Source: Convolutriloba macropyga (Eukaryota). From it: a DNA stretch of 64,000 nt. The notes under the pieces are model-generated. The model did no database searches and was not told the origin of the DNA. It was given only the letters and a program-made list of their open reading frames with translations. Positions 6,600 through 23,563 of this stretch are shown piece after piece (positions within the stretch are counted from its first letter, which is position 1; the number at the start of each line of letters is the position of its first letter). A program made the translations under genes and the position numbers. Location of the stretch: positions 27,094,001 to 27,158,000 of the forward strand of contig NC_134476.1 in the NCBI RefSeq assembly GCF_964194025.1. Direction: 5' to 3'.

Positions 6600-7530
6600 C
6601 TATGTAACTTAAAATTGAACCAGAATTGAGTTTCTCAAAAATCAATAATTCGGGAATTAAATTATTCAAAACCAAAAAATTTTTTTTGCAACCTTCTGAT
6701 TGACTTATTTGCAACCTTCTAATTGATTTCAACAGTTTAGTTTGGCTGAAACGGTTTACAATTGACCCCATAAAACTCTTTGATATCAAAACAACAGAAA
6801 AAACTGTTATCTGAGAAAGACCAACCAATAAAAAATAACAAGACATCTGCTTAATAGTAGTAGTAGTAGTAAAAGACTCAATTCACCTTTCGGGAAGTAC
6901 AAAGGATATAAAAAGACTGCAGTCAGACACATTGACTAATATTTTCCTTCGTTCCCTAGAATTTTCGCCAAATTTGAACATCATGACCGCTATTTGACTA
7001 AAAAAAACCTTCAATAGATTTAAACAATAGACAATTAATCGGCACTAAGACATTATAAAAGCCTGCAACAATTTGCAGGCGTAAATTTTCTGGCCTTTTA
7101 AATTCTCTTGGCTGAGCTGAAACCTTAAGCTGTATCTTTAAAAAATACATTAGGGTTTATACTTTCCGAATTTAAATTTGGCAGAACCAATATAAAGCGG
7201 ATAAGTATTAAATTCTTTCAAAAGAAAAAATTAAGGTTTGTAATTCAACATTGAGACACTTTTTGCAAAAAAATTTTCAATCAATCAAAAAGAAAATAAT
7301 TTCTAAACTTTATTTATCCTCCTATTTTTAGGTTAATACTGAATACTAAATTCTTTGAAGTACTCAGTGTTCAAATGGTGGTACAAATTTTATTAAAAAT
7401 AGGATAATATAATACTTTCTGTTACGAAAAGGGGATAACATTCCTGAACTCAAAAACAACTGCAATAGAAAACAATCGGCCCAGCGTATATTTATAGAAA
7501 AAAATTGACGGAGAAAATTTTAAAAATTCA

Positions 7531-7664
7531 TGTTGTGATAGTCGTTATAAATAATCTACCATTCCTTGTTGTTATTCCTGCATTTGTTTATGTGTTTGAT
7601 ATCGTGTATCTTTCAGAACCAACGTTGAGTTAAAGCTTTACGACAAAGCCTGTTTTCCAATACA
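7531..7664 (+). repeat. 5' LTR (134 bp)
   Basis: TGTTGTGATA...TTCCAATACA; 3 mismatches versus the 3' LTR. Confidence 0.97.
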
Positions 7665-7665
7665 A

Positions 7666-7680
7666 TTTAACTCAACGTTG
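7666..7680 (+). promoter_or_regulatory. Primer-binding site complementary to the element's own LTR (putative self-priming)
   Basis: TTTAACTCAACGTTG is the exact reverse complement of LTR 7620-7634 CAACGTTGAGTTAAA; no TGG tRNA-type PBS after the LTR. Confidence 0.8.
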
Positions 7681-7688
7681 TGAATGCC

Positions 7689-8930
7689 ATGAAGTTCAAG
7701 CCGCCACAACTTCCTTCAAGTCCGACTCCAGAACAATGGCGCAGGTGGAAAGACTGTTTCTCCAAGGGATTGGATATCAACGACATCACAGAAGACGAAC
7801 ACAAACTGACCTTTTTGATTTCGCATGTGGGTTCGGATTTTTTTGCCATTTTGGAACACGCTCCTTCATACAACGAGGCCATTTCCATACTGGACAAGCA
7901 CTTCAAGAAACCCACTAGGATCATATATGCCCGTCATCAGCTCCTCTCATGCCGTCAGAAATCGGATGAGTCTATTTCGGATTTTATCAATAGATTGAAA
8001 ATTCTACTGCAAAAGTGCGAATGCAAAGCCGTCAATATTCAGGAACATCAACAGCTCCTGTTTCGGGACGCCCTCGTTGCGGGCGTGAAATCGGATATCA
8101 ATCGCATGCGACTTCTGGAGCAAACGGACGAAGATGCAACTCTGGAGAATTGCATTTCACTTGCAAGCGCTATTGAACTGTCATCAGACTACAACCAAAG
8201 TTTTCGTGGAACTGAAGGACTGGACTCGTCTGTGCCATCTTCGGAGGCGGCATCAGAGTTGTGCGCCACAGGTCGACCGCCAACTAGTACTGTCAATGAA
8301 GGAGGACAAGTTCGAAATAAATGCCAGTTTTGTGGACTTCGTGGCCATCCGCGACGAAACTGCCCAGCTCGGAACGACAGTTGTCATAAATGCCAAAAGA
8401 AAGGACATTGGGCGACTGCTTGTCGGAGCCAACTGGCAGTAACACAACAAGCTCAGCCAGAAGAGTCATCCATTTCGGCACTGTCGTCGGTACTTCTCGC
8501 GGCCGGAGGAAGCTCCGATGCCTTCTACGCTTTGGTGAAGGTTGGGAAGAAGGAATTTCTCGGACTTGTTGACTCTGGAGCATCGGAGTCATTCATTTCC
8601 TACGAAACTGCACGTCAGTGTGACGGTAAAATAACTATGACAGCATCCGCTACTCAACTTGCAGACAAGACCAAATTACCAATACTTGGCCATATTGATC
8701 TGACGATGCAAGTGAACGCGGAAACCTACTCCATTCGTCTTAAAATTGCCAAGAGTCTTCTTGCAGATATCATAATCGGCATGGATCTTCTCGGGCAACA
8801 CTCAGTTGTACAGCTGGAAGCAAAGGGGGATCGTGGCCCCGTCTCATTCTCGAAAGCAGCTCAGGGCACACACGCTGCAGCTATTTTCCAGCATTGGACA
8901 TTGAACCACCGATTCTCTTCTCAACCATAA
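7689..8930 (+). CDS. gag: Gag + aspartic protease (5' part of gag-pol)
   Basis: Zinc knuckles CQFCGLRGHPRRNC and CHKCQKKGHWATAC; protease LVDSGAS and IIIGMDLL; apparent 1-nt deletion near 8885 shifts the frame from RT. Confidence 0.92.
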   Translation: MKFKPPQLPSSPTPEQWRRWKDCFSKGLDINDITEDEHKLTFLISHVGSDFFAILEHAPSYNEAISILDKHFKKPTRIIYARHQLLSCRQKSDESISDFINRLKILLQKCECKAVNIQEHQQLLFRDALVAGVKSDINRMRLLEQTDEDATLENCISLASAIELSSDYNQSFRGTEGLDSSVPSSEAASELCATGRPPTSTVNEGGQVRNKCQFCGLRGHPRRNCPARNDSCHKCQKKGHWATACRSQLAVTQQAQPEESSISALSSVLLAAGGSSDAFYALVKVGKKEFLGLVDSGASESFISYETARQCDGKITMTASATQLADKTKLPILGHIDLTMQVNAETYSIRLKIAKSLLADIIIGMDLLGQHSVVQLEAKGDRGPVSFSKAAQGTHAAAIFQHWTLNHRFSSQP

Positions 8931-9819
8931 CCAAGCAAAGGGCCAAACCAATCACAACTAAATCTCGCTATGCGAGTAAAGAGAACCAAGAATATCTTAC
9001 TCAAGAGATGGATCGCCTACTAGAAGCTGGCATCATAGAGCCTTCGTCGTCGCCATGGCGGGCCCAAGCAGTTGTGCCCAAGCTGAGGCCTCAACTAATG
9101 GCCCAAGCCTAATTGTTGTGATAAACTTATTAAATAGAACCAACGTTGAGTTAAATTGTAGTGGAAAACAGGCTTTGTCTTAAAGCTTTAACTCAGCTAA
9201 TTGAGGCCCAAGCACGCTCAACTGTAGACAGCAGCATCATCCCTGAGACTTTCGACGAAGACGAGATCATTTGGAAGTACGGGCCTAATTGTCTCCAATC
9301 CCGGAAGTGGAGACAATACTCGACGGAGCTGCACAGGACAAATATTTCTCTCGCGTGGACCTGAAATCTGCCTATCATCAAGTACCTATTCAGGAATCAG
9401 ATCGTTCATTCACAGCCTTCGAAGCAAATGGAGCGTTGTATCAGTTCACTCGACTTGCTTTTGGGCTAACTAACGCAGTTCCTGTTTTTCAACGAGTGAT
9501 CGATTCTATCATTCGCAAGGAGAAGCTAGAAAAGACACGAGCCTATCTGGATGATGTTATTATTTCGGGGGCAACTCAAGAGGAGCATGACCGTAATCTG
9601 GAGAGGTTTATATCAACAGTGAAGAAATACGGAATCACTCTCAACAAAGACAAGTGTCTGTTCAACGTACAACGAATTTCGTTGCTTGGCCATATTCTGG
9701 AAAAGGGTACAAAGCGGCCTGACCCTGAGAGACTCAAGACACTTATGGACTATCCGTTACCGGCCACTAAACAGGAACTCCACAGGCTCATTGGATTCTT
9801 TGCCTACAACGCGAAGTAG
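8894..9819 (+). pseudogene. pol: Reverse transcriptase, disrupted by a deletion/insertion (~9077-9293) and a TAG at 9817
   Basis: GIIEPSSSPWRAQ, VDLKSAYHQ, FTAF, FGLTNA, YLDD motifs; the usual R-x-x-x-D-Y segment is missing and replaced by patchwork DNA; NAK* where W is expected. Confidence 0.92.
9077..9293. other. Templated patchwork insertion in RT built from pieces of the same element
   Basis: 9114-9123 = LTR start; 9136-9155 = LTR 7615-7634; 9156-9195 = reverse complement of the LTR end; 9214-9281 = 11481-11548; joined by reiterated GCCCAAGC/CTAAT fragments. Confidence 0.9.
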
Positions 9820-11562
9820 ATTGCGCATTACTCGGACAAAGTCCAACCGCTCCTGGACGCTTTCAATGCAGGCCTTCTGCCTCTTCCAGAGTCTGCGGTC
9901 AAGGCTATAGGGAAACTGAAAGATGCTATAGCGAGGTCGATTTTGGCTGTTCCTAAATCTGGTTCGCCGCTCATTATGACGACAGACGCTTCAGGAACGG
10001 CGATAAGAGGAACGCTCACGCAAGACTCGCAGCCCATTGCTTTCTTTTCGCGCTCTCTCAGTTCTGGGGAACGTAAACAGTCAGCAGCGGAACGTGAAGC
10101 ATTGGCCATTGTAGAGTGTAGCCGTAAGTGGATGCCATACATGAGAGCTTACCATACCTCGATTCAAACGGACCAAGAGGATGTTGCTTTTATCTTCTCT
10201 CGCAATAAGTCCAAGGTTAAGAATGACAAGCTGATGCGGTGGCGATTAGAACTCTCCACACTGTCATATGGAATCGAGTTTAAGAAGGGGTCAGAGAACA
10301 TCGCAGCGGATGCAATCTCACGCATTGCGTCAATTGATAATTCCGGCACAGTGGACAACCTTCACAGACGCTTGTGCCATCCTGGAATTACAAGAATGTG
10401 GGAGTACGTCAGTCGACACAAATTACCATTTACTTTGAACGAAGTACGACAGTCTTGCTCTGAGTGTCCCACCTGCCTCGAATGGAAGCCTAAGTTCTAC
10501 CGTTCCGAGAAAGCTCATATTATAAAGGCTACTCGGCCGTTCGAACGTATTAGCATTGATTTGGTAGGACCAAAATCAATGTCCCCAGCTGGAAATCGCT
10601 ACCTTCTCACTGTAATTGATGAGTACAGTCGTTTTCCGTTCGCAATACCTTTAAAGGATATTTGTGCACAGTCAGTCATAAGGTCTCTCAAGTCAATCTT
10701 CTCACTTTGTGGAACACCGGGCTTCATTCACTCAGATAGGGGGACACAGTTTATGTCAGCCGACTTCGATAAATTCTGCGCCGATACGGGTATCGCACAC
10801 TCCCGAACCACACCGTATAACCCCAAAGGCAACGGCCAATGTGAGCGCCTTAATGGAACGGTTTGGAAGGGCGTCGTCTGTACACTCCATTCTCGCGGTC
10901 TGCAACCCGATCGGTGGGAAGATATACTGCCTGATGTGCTGGCGTCAATCCGAGCACTCATTTGTACATCTACACAAGAAACAGCTCACGAGCGGTTTTT
11001 TGGTTTCAAACGCAGGGCGCCTGCCAAATGGAATCTCCCTTCATGGCTGGCACCGGGTCACCCCGTGTATGTCAAGAGTTTTGTTCGCAACAAAGGCGAC
11101 CCTATAGTCCAGCCTGCAGAAGTTGTGGAGCCAATAAACAATCAATTTACGAGAATTAGGCGGCGTAATGGAGCAGTCGACACAGTTTCATCGTCCATGT
11201 TATCTCGCGGCAGCGTGGTGCCAAACCCTCGACGAAGATCCTCCCTGCCTCATCCCGTGAATGTCCTGGAAAAGCCACAGGAGGGAAGCGATGTAATAGC
11301 GGATACGTCGATTATGGACAACAATGCGCAAACGCTAGAAACGCTGGCTCCAGGATCGCAGCAAGATGTTTGCATGCCACGTACTGGTGAGGAGTCACCG
11401 CCCGTCATTTCCCAGCCAAGGAAGCCGGCAGGCCAGAGCACTCGTCGCAGTGGAAGAATAAGGCGTCTGCCAGAACGCCTACGCTCAACTGTAGACAGCA
11501 GCATCATCCCTGAGACTTTCGACGAAGACGAGATCATTTGGAAGTACGAGGAGCAACATTAG
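9820..11562 (+). CDS. pol: RT connection, RNase H and integrase (3' part of pol, in frame with RT across the TAG)
   Basis: RNase H TTDASG...EREALA...TDQ; integrase HHCC (HRRLCH...CSECPTC) and D-D-E (SIDLVG, HSDRG, CERLNG). Confidence 0.93.
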   Translation: MAHYSDKVQPLLDAFNAGLLPLPESAVKAIGKLKDAIARSILAVPKSGSPLIMTTDASGTAIRGTLTQDSQPIAFFSRSLSSGERKQSAAEREALAIVECSRKWMPYMRAYHTSIQTDQEDVAFIFSRNKSKVKNDKLMRWRLELSTLSYGIEFKKGSENIAADAISRIASIDNSGTVDNLHRRLCHPGITRMWEYVSRHKLPFTLNEVRQSCSECPTCLEWKPKFYRSEKAHIIKATRPFERISIDLVGPKSMSPAGNRYLLTVIDEYSRFPFAIPLKDICAQSVIRSLKSIFSLCGTPGFIHSDRGTQFMSADFDKFCADTGIAHSRTTPYNPKGNGQCERLNGTVWKGVVCTLHSRGLQPDRWEDILPDVLASIRALICTSTQETAHERFFGFKRRAPAKWNLPSWLAPGHPVYVKSFVRNKGDPIVQPAEVVEPINNQFTRIRRRNGAVDTVSSSMLSRGSVVPNPRRRSSLPHPVNVLEKPQEGSDVIADTSIMDNNAQTLETLAPGSQQDVCMPRTGEESPPVISQPRKPAGQSTRRSGRIRRLPERLRSTVDSSIIPETFDEDEIIWKYEEQH

Positions 11563-11572
11563 CGGGGGAGAA
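11561..11572 (+). promoter_or_regulatory. Polypurine tract
   Basis: AGCGGGGGAGAA immediately before the 3' LTR. Confidence 0.9.
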
Positions 11573-11706
11573 TGTTGTGATAGCCGTTATAAATAATCTA
11601 CCATTCCTTGTTGTTATTCCTGCATTTGTTTATGTGTTTGATATCGTGTATCTTTCAGAACCAACGTTGAGTTAAAGCTTTAAGACAAAGCCTGTTTTCC
11701 ACTACA
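11573..11706 (+). repeat. 3' LTR (134 bp)
   Basis: TGTTGTGATA...TTCCACTACA followed by TSD ATTCA. Confidence 0.97.
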
Positions 11707-12149
11707 ATTCATTTGACACTTTGAATCCTTATTTCTCGAATTTTTATTTGCTTATCACTGAAACAAAGTTTATCGGTTGACTTAGAAAGTAGATTACTCT
11801 CCAATTTCAAATAGATAAAGATAACCGCAATTGACCTGCAATCTTTTAATTAAATTGATCGAAAATAAATGATAAACTCGCTGCAATGAGAGAAAGTGAC
11901 GGCAAGCTCGACAATTGCAATTCAGTACAATTGCACGTATATGTGAACAAGAACTGATTTGAAGTGAGTGATTTCATTTGATGGTAACAATACCAATATC
12001 GATGGCAACATCGACGAAAAAAGAAGGCAAATAATAGCTCCCCACATCTAATAAACAAATTGAGGTCATAAATATAAAGAAGCACAGATTTCCCTGTAAA
12101 ACTTTAAAAGGAGATTTTGAGAAATGAGAAAGCAATAAATCAGATTCAA

Positions 12150-15100
12150 AATTTAGTGTGTTTTGACCGCTCATAGAGATGTCCAGATCGAACCAAAGTT
12201 GACATGGATCAACACCAGTGTACGTAGATTGTAGAAAAAAATAGTCCTTGCTATAGCTTGCCTACGAAGAAATTCAGTTTTTTTGTAAAGAAGCTTGTGA
12301 TTTATTCTAATGATAAACCTTGAATTAAATTATTTTCATCTAGGTCATAGAGTTGTCCAAACTGAATTATACTTCATAAGAAGTATCACCTGTGTACGTG
12401 ACCGTCTAACAGATATTTTGATATAGCTTGCCTGGAAAGAAAATTAATATTTCATAGGTTAATTTCCGATATTTCGAACAATCACTTTTGAAAAATTGCA
12501 TTTTCCAACGGGACAAGTGTCAAAAAGTTCTTCAAATTTATTTGAATTTATGTAGGGTATCCCTTGAGTACGTAGCGTGTAGAACAAAATAAGTTGTGCT
12601 ATATCTTGCCAGGGAATTTTAATTTTGTGTAGGAAAATTTGCCATCTTTCCCAATACTTAGTTTCGAAAAATAGTATTTTTCTGACGGCTGATAGAGTTG
12701 TCCAAATCAAGCTAAATTTGATATGGAGTATCCCTGGGTACGTAAAATGTGGAACAAAATGATTTTTAATTACAGCTTTTTTCGCAAAAAAGTCATTTAT
12801 TTGTGCAAAAATTTGCAAGTTATTCAATCATTCAATTTCTCAATATAGTGTTTTCTGACGGACCATTAGGTTGTTCAAATCAAACTCAAGTTGGCAAGGA
12901 GTATCACCTGTGTACGTACAGAGTAGAATAAAAAATTTTTGTTACAGCTTGCCTAGGGAAAAATTGAGTTTTTTTATACGTATGTTTGCGGTTTACTCGA
13001 TTAATGAATTTGAAGTTGGCAAGGAGTATCACCTGTGTACGTACGGTGTAGAATAAAAAAAAATTTATGGCAGCTTGCCAAGGGAGAAATTGAGTTTTTT
13101 AAACCTATCTTTTCGGTTTATTCGATTAAATAATTTGATAGTTTTTTTTTCTCGGTCATACAGTTTCTAAATTCCAACTAAACTTGGTATGGTGTATCCC
13201 TTGTAAGTATATTGTGGAACTAAAAAACTTTGCTAGAGCTTGCTTTCGAAAAAAAAATATTTTTTTTGTCAAAAATTTGCACCTTTTCGGATATTCAGTT
13301 TCTAAATAAACTATTTTTTTGACGGCTGATAGAGTTGTCTGAATCAAAAGAAATATGATATGGACTTTCCCTGTGTTTGTAAAAAGTGGAACAAAATGTG
13401 TTTTACTATAGGTTACTTTGGGAAAAGATTACTTATTTTTGCAAAATTTTGCGAATTATTCAAATATTTATTTTTTCAAATTTACTGTTGTTGACGGGTC
13501 ATTAGGTTGTTCAAACCAAACTAAAGTTGGCATGGAGTATCACCAGTGTACGTAAAATGTGGAACAAAATGGTTTTTTAGTGTAGCTTTTTTTGGATAAA
13601 AGTCATTTATTTGTACAAAAATTTGCCAGTTATTCGAAAAATTGATGTCATGAAGAACAATAATAATCTTTGCTAGGGCCTGCGTAGTAGGAAACTCAAT
13701 TATTTGAACGGAAGTGTGCGATTTTTTTAAAACAAAATATGTTGAATTAAAATATTTTCCTTCAAGTCATAGAGGTGTCCAAGTCGAAATATACTTGGTA
13801 AGAAGCATCACCTGTGTACGTGATTGTCGAACAGAGATGTTTTGCTATAGCTTCCCTGGGAAGGGCAGAAAGTTAAGATCTCCTAGGCTAATTTCCAATT
13901 ATTTGAATAATCAATTTCTAAATATAGCATTTTCGGACAGGGAAAGTTTGAAATAGTTCTTCTAGTAAAATCAGTTTGTTATAGAGTATCCCATGTGTAC
14001 GTAGAGTGTAGAACATCAAGTATTTTGTTATAGCTTGCCTGGGAAATAATAGTATTTTCTACGAAAATGTGCAATCTTTCCGAATGTTCAGTTTCGAATT
14101 ATAGTACTTTCCTGACGGCTAATAGAGTTGTCCAAAACAATTCAAATTTGATATGGAGTATCCCTGTGTACATTAAATGTAGACCAATTCTTTACTATAG
14201 CTTTCATTGGAAAAAGATTAACTATTTGTGTGAAAATCTGCAAATTATTCGAATAATCAATTCCGAAAGGTAGTGTTTTCTGACCGGTCGTAGAGATGTC
14301 CAGATCAAACCAAAGATAACAGGAATCAACACCATTGTACGCAGATTATAGAACAAAAATAAACCTTGCTATAGCTTGCCTAGGAGGAAGTTCAGTTCTT
14401 TTGTATAGAAGTTTTGGATTTATTCGAATGATAAATCTTGAATTAGAAAACTTTTTCTAGGTCATAGAGTTGTCTAAATTGAATTATACATTATGAGATG
14501 TAACACCTGTTTATGTGATTGTCTAACAGAGATATTTCCCTATAGCTTGCCTGGGAAGAAAATTAATATTTCCTAAGTTAATTTCCGATATTATGAATAC
14601 TCAATTTTGAAAAATCGCATTTTCTAACGGGACAAATGTCAACTAGTTCTTCAAATTTATTTAGGGTATCCCTGGTGTTCGCAACGTGTAGAACAAAATA
14701 AGTTGTGTAATAGCTTGCCTAAAAAAATTTAGTTTTTTTGTACGAAAATTTTTTGCAATCTTTTCAAAAATTTAGTTTTGAAAAATAGTTTTTTTTCTGA
14801 CGGCAAATAGAGTTGTCCATATCAAGCTAAATTTGAGATGGAGTATCCCTGTGTACGTAAAATGTGGAACAAATGGTTTTTAATTATACATTTTTTTTTT
14901 GGAAAAAAGTCATTTGTGCAAAAATTTGCCAGTTATTCGAAAAATCGATGTCGAAATTAGGTGTTTTTTGACAAATCATGAAATTGGTTAAATCGAACCA
15001 AAGTTGGCATGGAGTATCACCTGTGTACGTACAGTGCAGAATAAAAATAAATTTTGTACAGCTTGCTTAGGTAGAAATTGATTTTTTCATCCGTATTTTT

Positions 15101-18100
15101 GTGGTTTATTCGATTGTTTAATTTGGAATGATAGTATTTTTGTCTAGGTCATACGGTTTCTAAATTCCAACTAAACTTGGTGTGGTGTATCCCTTGTAAA
15201 TAGATTGTTGAACTAAAACACTTTGCTATGGCTCGCTTTGGAAAAAAATTAGTTTTTCGCAGAAAAATTTGCACTCTTTCGAATATTCAGTTTCGAAACA
15301 GAGTATTTTTCTGACGGCTGATAGAGTTGTCTAAATCAACACAAGAATGATATGGAGTTTCCCTGTGTTTGTAAAAAGTGGAACAAAACGTGTTTTTTAA
15401 TATAGCTGACTTTGGAAAAAGGTTACTTATATATGCAGAAAATTGCGAATTGTTCAAATAAATAACATTGAAGTATATTGTTGTTTTTGGGTCACTAAAA
15501 TGTTGAAATCGAACCAAAGTTGGCATGGAGTATCACCTGTGTGCGTACACTGTAGAACAAAATCATTTTTGCTATACCTTGCCTAGAAAAAAAAATAGTT
15601 TTTTTACAAAAATTTGTCAAAATCAAGCTAAATTTGATATGGAGTATCCCTGTGTATGTAAAATGTGGAGCAAAATTGGTTTTTTAGTAAAGTTTTTTGT
15701 AAAGAAGACATTTATTTGGGCAAAAATTTGCAGGTTATTTGAATAATCGATGTCGAAATATGGTGTTTTTTGACAAATCATGAAGTTGTTCAAATCGAAC
15801 CAAAGTTGGAATGGAGTATCACCTTTCTGCGTACAGTGAGGAACAAAACAAATTGTGCTATAGCCAGCCTAGGAAAAATATTAGATTTGTACAAAAATTT
15901 GCAGTTTTTTCGAATAATCAGTTTCAAAAATTGGATTTTTCTGACGACTGATAGAGTTGCCCAAATCAAACTAAATTTGATATGAAGTGTCCTGGTGACG
16001 TAAACTGTAGAATAAAGTTGTTTTCTAATATAGCGTTCTTTGGGTTACTCATTTGTGTGAAAACTTGCGAATTGTTTGAACAATCTTTTTTCGAAATATA
16101 GTGCTTTTCGGCCGGTCAAAGAAAAGTCCCAATCGAATCAGAGCTGACACGGAGCAGCGCCAGTGTACGTGTATTGAAGAACGAAAACAATTTTTGCTAG
16201 GGCCCGCATTGTAAAAAATTCAGTTTTTTGAACGGAAAATTGCAATTTTTTCGAACGACACATTTTGAATAAAAATGTTTTCATTCAGGTCAAAGAGTTG
16301 TCAAAATCGAATTATATTTGGTAAGAAGTATCATCGATGTACGTGATCGCCTAACAGAGATAATTTGCTATAGCTTGCCTGGGAAGATAATTGAGATTTC
16401 CTAGCCTAATTTCCGATTGTTCGAAAAATCAATTTTTAAATACAGCTTTTTTTGGACAAGACAAATTTGAAGTAGTTCGTCGAGTCAAATCAATTTGTTA
16501 TAGGGTATCCCTTGTGTACGTAGAGTGTAGAACAAAAAGTGTTTTGCTATAGCTTGCCTAGGAAATATTAATATTTTGTACGAAAATTTGCAATCTTATC
16601 GAATATTCAGTTTCAAAATATAGTACATTTCTGACGGCTAATGGAGTTGTCCCAAACAATTTAAATTTGATATGGAGTATCCCTGTGTACATAAAATGTA
16701 GACCAAGACGTTTTTTTTGTACTATAGTTTTCTTTGAAAAAAGGTTACTTATTTGTGTGAAAATGTGCGAATTGTTCGAATATTGAATTTCGAAAGGTAG
16801 TGTTTTCTGACCAGTCATAGAGGAAGAAATTCAGTTTTTTTGTACAGAAGCTACGATTTATTCGAAAAATAAATTTTCAATTAAAGTATTTTCATCTAGG
16901 TCACCGAGCTGATCAAATCGAATTAAACTTGGTTAGAAGTTTCGTGATTGTCCAAAAACAAGTGATTGTTCGTGTTTTATTTGATTGTCCAAAAGAAAAA
17001 CTTTTTTTGCTTGCTTGGAAAAACTTAATATTTCAGAAGCTAATTTCTGATTATTCGAATAATTAATTTCTAATTATAGCATTTTTGGACATGACAAATT
17101 TGAAATATTTCATCAAACCGAATCAGTCTGCTATAGTTTGCCTAAGACAAAATGGTGCTTTGTACAAAAACCGTCAACTTTTTTTCAAAATTTCGAACTT
17201 CAAATTAAATCAAAATTTGCTGCCAAAATGAACAATGAGAAGGATTGATTGGCTGGATTTGTACAGGTTTTCTATAAGCATTAGGTTTTGAATAATTTCA
17301 AAGGTTTTGTGCAGAGCTACAGATTCAAAAAAAACACAATCAAAACCCGAGCGCTAAACTATCTTGTCGATATCTCCAGCGCTTATTGCTGTCATCTTGT
17401 GCTAATGGTAGTGGTTCTGAAACAGAGAAGTATATTACAGTTGGGTTGATAGAGATTTGGTTGTCTGCAAAATTAAGTATTTATTGGAGTACGATGTGCG
17501 ATGTGGTATTTTGCAAAAAGCAGATGACGTGCAAAGTATTTTTTGGTCTTGATGTAAAAGATTAAGAAGTTACAGTTAAGTTACCACTCGCGTCTGTTCA
17601 AAATAAAATATTTAATCTTCCTTCAAAAGAAACGTGTATTTGTTATGTTTGATTAATTATAAGTGATTGATTTGATCTAATGATAGTTCTACGGGTTTGT
17701 CTGATTAATTGATTAAAGTTTAATTTTATTACAAATTTTTGTCTCGAATTTGTGCATAGGCCTAGGAAAGAACAAACGATTAAGTGGAAAAAAGTTCGTT
17801 TTCAAAAAAACTAATCTCCAAGGTGATAAATTTTTAAAATCAACTGAATTTTGATTTTAATGTCCCACTATGCATGACGGTTCTCAATCATCAAGAAAGT
17901 TTGGCGTAGCTTGGATAGAAAAAAATTAAGTTCGGACATTTTGATTATCCTAGTTTAAGAAGTTTTTAATGGACCAAACAGTTTACCAAAACAATTCCAT
18001 CTCAAGTTCAGAGTTCCGGCTGGCATAAGGCGTCTGAAGCGCCAAAAAAATTTTTTCAGCTTGCCTAGGAAAAACTTACATTTTCGTATGTATATTTGTG

Positions 18101-21381: not shown

Positions 21382-23563
21382 ATTATGTAAGATTGGCGTT
21401 GAATGCGTTGAATTTATGTAAGATCTACGCTTGAGCGTAGATCTTACATAAATTCAACGCATTCAACGTCAATCTTACATAATTTTGCGTTGAATTTTGG
21501 CGTAGATCTTACATATTTAGCGTTGAATTTTAGCGTAGATCTTACATATTTAGCGTTGAATTTAGGGTAGATCTTACATAAATTCAACGCATTCAACGCC
21601 AATCTTACATATTTTGCGTTGAAATTTGGCGTAGATCTTACATATTTAGCGTTGAATATTAGCGTAGATCTTACATATTTAGCGTTAAATTTAGCGTAGA
21701 TCTTACATGAATTCAACGCATTCAACGCCCATCTTACATAATTTTGCGTTGAATTTTGGCGTAGATCTTACATATTTAGCGTTGAATTTTAGCGTAGATC
21801 TTACATTTTTAGCGTTGAATTTTAGCGTAGATCTTACATATTTAGCGTTGAATTTAGCGTAGATCTTACATAAATTCAACGCATTCAACGACAATCTTAC
21901 ATATTTTGCGTTGAAATTTGGCGTAGATCTTACATATTTAGCGTTGAATTTTAGCGTAGATCTTACATATTTAGCGTTGAATTTTGGCGTAGATCTTACA
22001 TATTAAGCGTTGAATTTTAGCGTAGATCTTACATTCTTAGCGTTGTATTTAGCGTAGATCTCCCATAAATTCAACGCTTTCAACACCAATCTTACATATT
22101 TTGCGTAGAATTTTGGCCGAGATCTTACAAATTTAAGGTTGAATTTTTTGAATTCCATTTCAGACCACTTTATGATTTCAAAAATTTTTCAAGTTTTTTT
22201 TTCGAAAAGTCAATTTTTTCACTGTTTCGACCCCGATACTTCACAGGTGAGAAAAGCGAAGTCAGCAAAAAAACCACTTTTTAGTGCTCTTTTATAGTTC
22301 GAAATCCATTTGAGACCATTTTACGACTTCAGAACTTTTCCAGGTTTTTTTTCGAAAAATCATTTTCCCTGTTTTGACCCCTATGCTGCAAAGGTGAGAA
22401 ACGTGAAATCTGAGAAAAATCATTTTTAGTGCTCTTTTATAGTGCAAAATCCAATTGAATGTTCCAATAAGTTAATTTTTCAAAAAGTTAATTTTTTAAC
22501 TGTTTCGACCCTATACTGCACAGGTGAGAAAAATCACTTTTTAGTGCTCTTTTATAGTGCAAAATCCGTTTCAGACCATTTTACGATTTCAAAACTTTTT
22601 CAAGTTTTTCCTTCGAAAAATTAATTTTTTCACTATTTCGAACCCGATACTCCAAAGGTGAGTAACAGAAAGTCAGAAAAAATCTTTTTTAGTGCTCTTT
22701 TATAGTGCAAAATCCAATTCAAACCATTTGAAGATTTCAAATTTTTCAAGTTTTTTTTCGAAAAATTAATTTTTTACTGTTTCGACCCCTATGATGCACA
22801 ATTGAGAAGAATGAAGTCAGCAAAAAATAACCATATGCTCTCCTACGGTGCAAAAACCATTTCAGACCATTTTGGGAATTCAAATTTTTTTCAAAACTTA
22901 AAAAGAAATTAAACTTTTCCCAGTACTTCTCACATGATAAATGCGTTGAATACGTTGAAATTATGTAAGATCTCGGCTAAATTCAACGAAAAATATGTAA
23001 GATCTAGGCTGAATTCAACAAAATATATGCAAGTTCTACGCTAAATTCAATCCAAAATATGTAACGTCTACGCTAAAATCAACGCAAAATATGTGAGAGC
23101 TACGCTAAATTCAACGCAAAATATGTAAGATCTACGCTTTATAAGGATTGCGGCTCTTAAGGAAACCAAGGTACGGTGGCGCAAGGGTAGAAGAGGTGAC
23201 AAGTAAACAGGAGGTCAGTGGTTCGAGTCCCATACCCAGAGTTCTACGCGTTGATTTTTTGTAAGATCAACGCTAAATTCAACGCAAAAATATGTAAGAT
23301 CTACGCTAAATTCAACGCTAATTATGTAAGATCTACGCTAAATTCGACGCTAAATATGTAAGATCAGCGGCAACTAGCGTTGACAAGTTGGAAAATTCAC
23401 CGCCATTTCTTACATAATTTTGCGCTGAATGCGTTGAATTTTTGTCTTTAAATTCAACGCATTCAACGCAAAATTATGTAGGAAAATTGCGGTGAATTTT
23501 CCGACTTGTCAACGCTAGCTGCCGCTGATCTTATATAATTTTGGCCAAATTCCTCGGCCCGGG
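21382..23563 (-). mobile_element. Foldback-like non-autonomous element made of 32-33-bp repeats (left end not identified)
   Basis: Arrays of AGCGTAGATCTTACATATTTAGCGTTGAATTT(T) in both orientations; ends CCTCGGCCCGGG; inverted homologue of 27957-29611. Confidence 0.65.

What the first reader, a model, noticed from the sequence alone, without database searches (positions are those of the whole stretch)
9136..9195. Possible genomic fossil of a self-primed minus-strand cDNA
Seen: inside the RT lesion, plus-strand LTR sequence AGAACCAACGTTGAGTTAAA (7615-7634) is fused directly to the minus-strand copy of the LTR end (TTGTAGTGGAAAACAGGC...AACTCA, reverse complement of 7626-7665). The leading AGAAC comes from the LTR, not from the PBS flank, and homology starts exactly at the A of the Inr-like TCAG. 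That is the predicted primer-plus-extension product of self-priming. Established: the Tf1 self-primer can remain on cDNA ends. The fragment carries the 3'-LTR alleles at both diagnostic sites. Alternative: a DNA-level template switch across the same inverted repeat would create the same junction.
Basis: partly seen in the sequence, partly recalled or inferred. Interest (0 to 1): 0.8.

Follow-up and report, generated by a model that had tools for sequence, protein, structure and literature searches.

The report
Spliced-leader self-primer cDNA relic
A broken jumping gene in this acoel worm genome holds a DNA copy of its own replication primer, which is the host's trans-spliced mRNA leader plus the element's first 18 bases, fused to the first stretch of copied DNA. 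This shows that the element primes its own copying and does so from a leader-spliced RNA.

Summary
Window 9106-9195 reads: the host's 31/32-nt spliced leader (SL, identical to the published Symsagittifera roscoffensis SL), then 18 nt of LTR (7617-7634), then 40 nt of inverted U5/R (reverse complement of 7626-7665).

The SL meets the LTR exactly at a ...TCTTTCAG|AACC acceptor. No DNA in the genome has SL next to this LTR with the normal continuation.

A second, independent relic of the same design sits on contig C15. It lies at the left end of another copy and inside that copy's 5-bp target-site duplication, so it was part of an integrated cDNA.

The 15-bp R/PBS pairing is kept by six compensatory changes across three related families.

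The relic lies in a 222-bp patchwork that replaces 82 bp of the RT gene. The patchwork most likely arose by serial template jumps during reverse transcription.

Public read contigs could neither confirm nor refute the junctions. No RNA data could be laid, so trans-splicing of the element RNA is inferred, not shown.

The scan had already noted SL-headed LINEs elsewhere in this genome. It had not noted this primer relic.

The parts
7526..7530 (+). Target-site duplication ATTCA, left copy. The right copy is at 11707-11711.
   Evidence: Read directly.
7531..7664 (+). 5' LTR (134 bp, TG...CA). It carries two private substitutions in U5, at 7641 and 7660.
   Evidence: searches (D15; 3/134 differences from the 3' LTR), and table 3.
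7603..7616 (+). Pyrimidine-rich tract ending in CAG. This is the inferred SL trans-splice acceptor, with the splice between 7616 and 7617.
   Evidence: The SL-to-LTR junction falls here in the window relic and in the C15 relic. A TTTCAG 2-3 nt upstream of the R complement is also present in two related families.
7620..7634 (+). Self-primer segment of R, 15 nt, complementary to the PBS.
   Evidence: duplex -19 kcal/mol; 15 pairs, 100% paired in 3 families, 6 pairs with compensatory changes.
7666..7680 (+). Primer-binding site, one base after the LTR end. It does not start with TGG, so it is not a tRNA 3'-end site.
9077..9298 (+). RT lesion: 222 bp of patchwork replacing 82 bp found in the other copies. 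It is unique to this copy.
   Evidence: table 5 ('skips 222, 82 letters between').
9106..9137 (+). Complete copy of the host spliced-leader exon: 31 nt as published, 32 nt matching the SL RNA gene.
   Evidence: 32/32 to the SL RNA gene in L063. (SL|GTAAGT genes in tandem arrays linked to 5S rRNA). (published SL in PMC9911081).
9138..9155 (+). The first 18 nt downstream of the acceptor (equal to 7617-7634), plus sense. Together with the SL this is the primer part.
9156..9195 (+). Minus-sense copy of 7665 down to 7626 (spacer, U5 and the start of R). This is the extension part. It is identical to the family-typical U5.
   Evidence: (I1, I2), and (55/55 to three other copies).
9196..9203 (+). Short fragment resembling the 5' start of the SL (GCTAATTG, one base missing).
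   Evidence: This is a weak match on its own.
9205..9213 (+). Copy of the 9-nt motif GGCCCAAGC from the left flank of the lesion (native at 9061-9069). Further copies lie at 9100-9108 and, partially, at 9076-9083.
9214..9281 (+). Exact 68-nt direct copy of 11481-11548, the end of the pol ORF, 24 nt upstream of the 3' LTR.
   Evidence: (D18).
9283..9292 (+). The first 10 nt of the SL again (GCCTAATTGT), preceded by an extra G.
9288..9297 (+). Inverted copy of the adjacent 9308-9317 (snap-back). It overlaps the SL fragment by 5 nt.
11573..11706 (+). 3' LTR.

Best explanation
The element (7531-11706) is a roughly 4-kb Ty3/gypsy retrotransposon that primes its own reverse transcription, in the manner of Tf1. 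A 15-nt stretch near the 5' end of its RNA pairs with the PBS just past the 5' LTR.

In this acoel host the element's RNA is first trans-spliced, and the host SL replaces everything upstream of 7617. The resulting 5' end (SL plus 18 nt) folds onto the PBS and is extended by RT into minus-strand DNA. When this RNA-DNA chimera is copied into the second strand, it gives a duplex reading SL - R(18) - inverted U5. Window 9106-9195 is such a molecule, with at least 40 nt of minus-strand DNA.

The molecule was stitched into the RT gene of this copy together with:
- 68 nt from the 3' end of pol,
- two more SL 5'-end fragments,
- three copies of a 9-nt flank motif.

The stitching most likely happened by serial template jumps of RT during the round of reverse transcription that produced this copy.

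What is shown: the sequence anatomy; the identity of the SL; the junction at an acceptor; the absence of any DNA template for that junction; a second relic inside a target-site duplication; and covariation of R and PBS.

What is inferred: that the genomic RNA is trans-spliced; where RNase H cuts; and that the patchwork arose inside the particle rather than in the chromosome.
For: 1. 9106-9137 is identical to the SL exon. SL RNA genes (SL|GTAAGT, linked to 5S rRNA) form arrays on C9. The sequence is the published S. roscoffensis SL (PMC9911081).

2. The SL abuts 7617 directly after TCTTTCAG.

3. The SL-R junction occurs only at this locus within 3 mismatches, so no copy continues with the normal R-U5. 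The junction therefore comes from RNA, not DNA.

4. There is a second relic at G000:C15:14933186-14933210. It reads SL(8-31) - R18 - inverted U5 (18 nt) - CCAA - 5' LTR. The 5-bp duplication GATAC flanks the whole unit, SL included. The relic was therefore the end of an integrated cDNA. It differs from the window relic in SL length, extension length and position, so the two events are independent.

5. The R/PBS helix has 15 pairs, 100% paired in three families, with 6 compensatory pairs. Versions slid by 1-3 columns are 26-47% paired.

6. Every identifiable filler piece comes from the element or the SL, and the lesion sits in a copy of the same family. That family has about 29 copies by contig depth, roughly 0.01% of the genome.

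7. Precedent in Tf1: the self-primer is cut from the RNA 5' end (PMC5341516), and about half of the cDNA keeps a copy of the primer at its end (PMC11042837).
Against: - No RNA data could be laid, so trans-splicing of this element is not directly seen.
- No read-level or second-assembly confirmation of the lesion junctions was obtained.
- The inverted part runs 9 nt beyond the expected primer cut (to 7626). The template was therefore not simply the cleaved RNA. This needs priming in trans or an extension after the first strand transfer.
- The thrice-repeated flank motif and the 10-nt snap-back are also typical of chromosomal alt-end-joining repair.
- No relics were found for two related families.
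- The RNA-DNA boundary itself cannot be placed within the 15-nt complementary stretch.
Confidence: 0.72

Rival explanations
1. Chromosomal repair. An already integrated copy suffered a double-strand break in its RT gene, and alt-end-joining (Pol-theta-like) patched it with templated snippets, including a captured cDNA or RNA fragment of the same family. The block would still be a self-priming product, but it would have been captured after integration.
For: GGCCCAAGC from the left flank is re-copied three times. A 10-nt snap-back copy of the right flank is present. Junctions carry 2-5 nt microhomologies. The filler pieces show no mutations, whereas the LTRs differ at 3/134 positions. That difference is not significant: about 1.7 changes would be expected in the filler.
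Against: The break would have had to fall in the same family, which makes up about 0.01% of the genome, that supplied all the filler. The templates include three RNA 5' ends (SL) and sequence 2.2 kb away. The C15 relic shows that such molecules end up in cDNA before integration.
Confidence: 0.17
2. The SL-R junction was made by RT jumping from the element RNA onto an SL RNA. The element's RNA is not actually trans-spliced.
For: The AG at the junction is shared by both sequences, giving 2-nt microhomology. The lesion shows that RT or a polymerase jumped onto SL 5' ends at least once more (9283-9292).
Against: Two independent relics have the identical junction, at the exact 3' end of the SL exon and directly after a pyrimidine tract plus CAG. 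The abundant SL RNA continues with GTAAGT, so its exon end is not a template end.
Confidence: 0.06
3. One reading: a DNA polymerase switched templates across the R/PBS inverted repeat in chromosomal DNA.
For: The flip at GAGTTAAA|TTGTAG is what such a switch would give (I1).
Against: It cannot explain a full SL fused to 7617, because no DNA template with that junction exists. It also cannot explain the C15 relic inside a target-site duplication.
Confidence: 0.02
4. An assembly or read chimera.
For: No independent reads cover the lesion-specific junctions. Public contigs show only the intact family form.
Against: Logan contigs drop rare variants by construction. The structure is biologically precise (exact SL, splice acceptor, PBS-defined flip). 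It recurs in a different form on another chromosome, with a matching target-site duplication.
Confidence: 0.03

Closest known systems
Tf1/Tf2 self-priming LTR retrotransposons of Schizosaccharomyces pombe
   Same: The 5' end of the element's own RNA pairs with a PBS just past the 5' LTR and primes minus-strand DNA. A copy of the primer can stay on cDNA ends (PMC5341516; PMC11042837).
   Different: In this element the primer's 5' part is a host spliced leader added by trans-splicing, giving about 49 nt in all with 15 nt paired. In Tf1 the primer is the first 11 nt of the primary transcript. The host is an acoel animal. No chromodomain was detected in the integrase. The evidence here is two genomic relics, not biochemistry.
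Spliced-leader relics in retroposed sequences
   Same: An SL in genomic DNA marks passage through a trans-spliced RNA.
   Different: Those are 5' ends of ordinary retrocopies. Here the SL is followed after 18 nt by a strand flip at the PBS-defined point, so it marks a priming intermediate of an LTR element.
Aberrant retroviral/retrotransposon DNA ends that keep primer or PBS sequence (2-LTR circle junctions, integrase-independent insertions)
   Same: Primer-derived sequence is retained at cDNA termini and carried into DNA (PMC11042837).
   Different: Those retain tRNA- or PBS-derived bases at the U5 end. Here an entire RNA primer plus nascent minus strand is embedded internally (window) or at the U3 end (C15).
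Templated insertions of alt-end-joining, and capture of Ty1 cDNA at chromosomal breaks (the latter from my own knowledge, not checked here)
   Same: A patchwork filler with microhomologies, re-copied flanks and snap-back segments.
   Different: All the templates are element RNA/cDNA or SL 5' ends, and the target is the same family. This fits template jumping by RT inside the particle better.
Cer1 of C. elegans (gypsy/Ty3)
   Same: An LTR element in a trans-splicing host, with an SL1 acceptor inside the element.
   Different: In Cer1 only a subgenomic spliced mRNA carries SL1. The 8-kb genomic RNA is not trans-spliced, and the PBS fits tRNA-Pro (PMC3315495).

Membership tests
Ty3/gypsy (Metaviridae) LTR retrotransposon | Two LTRs with TG...CA ends and a short target-site duplication | tested here: met
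   134-bp LTRs and a 5-bp ATTCA duplication.
Ty3/gypsy (Metaviridae) LTR retrotransposon | Domain order gag - protease - RT - RNase H - integrase | tested here: met
   Pfam hits in that order on the ORF pieces.
Self-priming LTR retrotransposons (Tf1-type mechanism) | A PBS next to the 5' LTR that is complementary to the 5' region of the element's own transcript | tested here: met
   15/15 complementarity between 7620-7634 and 7666-7680. It is kept by 6 compensatory pairs in 3 families.
Self-priming LTR retrotransposons (Tf1-type mechanism) | The PBS is not a tRNA 3'-end complement | tested here: inconclusive
   The PBS starts TTTAAC, not TGG, so it cannot pair with a CCA end (read directly). 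Host tRNAs and tRNA fragments were not scanned.
Self-priming LTR retrotransposons (Tf1-type mechanism) | Minus-strand DNA covalently continuous with the RNA 5' end | tested here: met
   Sequence-level relics exist at window 9106-9195 and on C15. This was not shown biochemically.
Self-priming LTR retrotransposons (Tf1-type mechanism) | RNase H cut that frees the primer 3' end | not testable with these tools
   The RNA-DNA boundary is ambiguous within the 15-nt complementary stretch.
Tf1/sushi chromovirus clade | Chromodomain at the integrase C-terminus | tested here: not met
   No chromodomain hit in 9943-11559 at E<=0.01. No RT phylogeny was done.
SL trans-spliced RNA | [quoted passage not shown] | tested here: met
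   32/32 to the SL RNA gene and identical to the published SL.
SL trans-spliced RNA | The junction falls at a pyrimidine-tract/AG acceptor in the genomic source | tested here: met
   TGTATCTTTCAG|AACC is present in all copies. Both relics share the same junction.
SL trans-spliced RNA | SL-bearing transcripts seen in RNA | not testable with these tools
   No RNA run of this organism was offered. The one read-laying run gave DNA contigs, plus an RNA-like run of another organism that holds only the SL.
Alt-end-joining templated insertion | Filler copied from sequence near the break, with microhomology at the joints | tested here: inconclusive
   A flank motif is copied 3 times and there is a 10-nt snap-back. 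However, the main pieces come from RNA 5' ends, from 1.5 kb upstream and from 2.2 kb downstream.

The most novel reading that the evidence does not exclude
In this acoel, a clade of gypsy elements depends on the host's SL trans-splicing to create the 5' end that serves as their self-primer. Self-priming in turn removes the SL from the template, so the leader never blocks strand transfer. In addition, the family's LTR terminus resembles SL nt 9-32, with its first 10 nt identical to the SL. This lets integrase process SL-tailed cDNA ends, as it did in the C15 copy.
Probability: 0.3. Interest if true: 0.85.

Novelty: new variant of a known kind. Interest (0 to 1): 0.7.

Why it matters
Self-priming has been shown biochemically only for the fission-yeast Tf elements. 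Elsewhere it is inferred from R/PBS complementarity alone. Here two genomic relics preserve the actual priming product in an animal, and they carry an RNA-only tag, the spliced leader.

This has three consequences:
- It gives sequence-level evidence that the pairing is used in vivo.
- It indicates that an LTR retrotransposon's template or primer RNA can be SL trans-spliced. I did not find this described in the papers I could search. Cer1 is the contrary case.
- It suggests why self-priming suits a trans-splicing host: cleaving off the primer also removes the foreign leader from the template.

It also offers a way to mine the several thousand SL relics in such genomes (about 3,600 hits; about 8,500 by contig depth) for reverse-transcription intermediates.

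Tried and rejected
- Read confirmation. The two run searches and the one read-laying run returned only Logan contigs. These collapse the family onto its intact form and do not cover the lesion-specific junctions, so there is no verdict.
- Second-assembly check. Exact ORF products across the junctions were looked up and none is on record.
- Transcript contigs. I searched for them through gag homologues. The contigs found are genomic, not RNA. They did yield two related families for the covariation test.
- Relics of the two related families in this genome: none.
- SL-U3 chimeras through the shared 10-mer: none. The hits were SL variants.
- An SL gene variant matching the C15 relic's SL: none. 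The variant form is unique to that locus, so its two differences are mutations or copying errors.
- A source elsewhere in the genome for the filler piece 9080-9102: none.
- The first idea that TGTTGTGATAAACTTA... was a mini-LTR of a related family was dropped once one search showed thousands of copies with unrelated flanks.

Full report
**The element.** Window 7531-11706 is a 4.2-kb LTR retrotransposon.
- It has 134-bp LTRs with TG...CA ends that differ at 3/134 positions.
- It is flanked by a 5-bp duplication, ATTCA.
- Its ORF pieces carry gag, protease, RT, RNase H and integrase in gypsy order.
- About 18 copies were located by similarity. Contig depth relative to the single-copy flank suggests about 29 copies.
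- A 15-nt stretch of the LTR (7620-7634) is perfectly complementary to 7666-7680, which lies one base after the LTR end.
- I found two related families through gag homologues. Their sequences differ, but the pairing is kept: 15 pairs, all paired in all three families, six with changes on both sides. Versions of the structure slid by 1-3 columns pair at only 26-47%.

This is the Tf1-type self-priming geometry (mechanism as summarised in PMC5341516).

**The observation.**
- 9136-9155 equals 7615-7634.
- 9156-9195 is the reverse complement of 7626-7665. It is exact against the 3' LTR and has two mismatches against the 5' LTR.

First, 9141-9195 is equally the plain reverse complement of U5+PBS (I1). 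The quoted junction is therefore present in every copy, and only the bases to the left of 9141 discriminate. Second, the '3'-LTR alleles' are carried by all nine other 5' LTRs I looked at and by the family contigs in public runs (table 3). This copy's 5' LTR simply acquired two private changes.

**What lies to the left.** The 20-mer starting at 9114 occurs about 3,600 times in the genome with unrelated flanks on both sides.
- Followed by GT, it forms large tandem arrays on contig C9. Each unit there reads leader|GTAAGT, followed by a stem-forming tail, and is linked to a 5S rRNA gene. This is the classical layout of spliced-leader RNA genes.
- The sequence is identical to the SL published for the acoel Symsagittifera roscoffensis, a 1.1-Gb genome in which 30% of genes are trans-spliced (PMC9911081).
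- Window 9106-9137 matches the SL gene over 32/32 bases.

The block therefore reads SL, then 7617-7634, then inverted 7665-7626. The SL ends in AG and the LTR reads TGTATCTTTCAG|AACC, so the join falls exactly at a pyrimidine-tract/AG acceptor.

**Why this matters for the interpretation.** A search for the SL-R junction with up to three mismatches finds only this locus, so no copy continues with normal R-U5. No DNA template exists for a DNA-level switch, and the SL can only have been joined to the LTR sequence in RNA. The strand flip 18 nt later lies where the RNA 5' end, paired to the PBS, would be extended. The block is what one expects if the RNA primer (SL + 18 nt) and the minus-strand DNA grown from it were copied into double-stranded DNA. 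It can equally be described as plus-strand strong-stop DNA that ran on through the retained primer to the RNA's capped end. For Tf1, about half of particle cDNA keeps a DNA copy of the primer at its end (PMC11042837).

**A second, independent relic.** The diagnostic 25-mer occurs at one other place, G000:C15:14933186-14933210.
- There, a 5'-truncated SL (from TGTTGTGATA on, with two differences found nowhere else) is followed by the same 18 nt, then 18 nt of inverted U5, then CCAA, then the 5' LTR of another copy.
- The 5-bp duplication of that copy, GATAC, lies immediately outside the SL fragment on the left and after the 3' LTR on the right.
- The extension was therefore the terminal part of the cDNA that integrated.
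- The first 10 nt of the LTR are identical to SL nt 9-18. Integrase evidently used the SL-internal copy as the end. This is an inference from the position of the duplication.
- The two relics differ in SL length, extension length (40 nt versus 18 nt) and location, so they are separate events sharing the same SL-R and R-U5 junctions.

**The lesion around the relic.** Other copies have 82 bp where this one has 222 bp, at 9077-9298. Besides the relic, the filler holds:
- an exact 68-nt copy of 11481-11548;
- the first 10 nt of the SL once more (9283-9292), and possibly a third time (9196-9203);
- three copies of GGCCCAAGC from the left flank;
- a 10-nt inverted copy of the adjacent right flank.

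One 23-nt piece has no source elsewhere in the genome.

Read in the direction of minus-strand synthesis, this looks like a chain of run-offs at RNA 5' ends, each followed by a jump to a new template. One of those templates is the primer-linked minus strand.

I favour an origin during the reverse transcription that made this copy, for two reasons. Every identifiable template is element RNA/cDNA or SL. The 'target' is a member of the same small family.

The re-copied flank motif and the snap-back are also hallmarks of chromosomal alt-end-joining. I cannot exclude capture at a break, or conversion of a resident copy by an aberrant cDNA. Either way the block itself remains a product of self-priming.

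**Open points.**
- No RNA data could be laid, so trans-splicing of the element RNA rests on the two relics.
- Public contigs neither confirm nor refute the lesion junctions. Look-ups of junction-spanning ORFs in other assemblies found nothing.
- The inverted part runs 9 nt past the expected primer cut. This implies priming on an uncut RNA, or extension after the first strand transfer.
- Relics of the two related families were not found.
- In C. elegans Cer1 the genomic RNA is not SL-spliced (PMC3315495). I found no description of an SL-bearing self-primer in the searchable literature. That search does not cover subscription journals.

**Verdict.** The finding is real and more informative than reported. 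It is a fossil of a self-priming intermediate that carries the host's spliced leader, and it occurs twice in this genome. It is a new variant of a known mechanism. It suggests that trans-splicing supplies the self-primer's 5' end, and that removing the primer also removes the leader from the template.

Noticed in passing
window 7531-7554 and 11573-11596, compared with window 9114-9137: The first 24 nt of the LTR resemble SL nt 9-32. The first 10 nt are identical and 20 of about 24 match. Only 24 of 20,000 shuffled SLs score as well anywhere in the LTR, and the real match sits exactly at the LTR terminus. A related family's LTR starts differently (TGTTATATAT). Origin unexplained.
   Followed up: partly
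G000:C9:23.14-23.78 Mb and 62.06-62.12 Mb (L061-L066): There are large tandem arrays (about 1.0-1.8 kb units) of SL RNA genes linked to 5S rRNA genes, on the same contig as the window and a few Mb away. More than 1,600 SL+GT sites exist genome-wide.
   Followed up: partly
L034/L035 (G000:C1:3264625 and 3269769, minus strand): Several partial and full SL copies lie in tandem within about 120 bp, duplicated 5 kb apart. They look like repeated rounds of trans-splicing and retro-copying.
   Followed up: no
L084:3660-3820: In a related family's contig, the LTR that follows integrase is followed directly by a PBS and the gag start. This is either a tandem element sharing one LTR or a collapsed assembly.
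   Followed up: no
window 12100-16000: A diverged satellite with units of about 170-176 bp and a higher-order spacing of about 690 bp begins 400 bp downstream of the element. The region has low GC (32%) and positive GC skew.
   Followed up: no
window 21434-23138: A tandem array of a 32-33-bp unit (with 129- and 195-bp higher periods), plus an inverted block of the same unit at 22958-23138.
   Followed up: no
run X6 (another organism, probably RNA): About 960 contigs of a different organism carry the same SL, often at a contig end, and nothing else of the element. This suggests the SL is shared with a related species.
   Followed up: no
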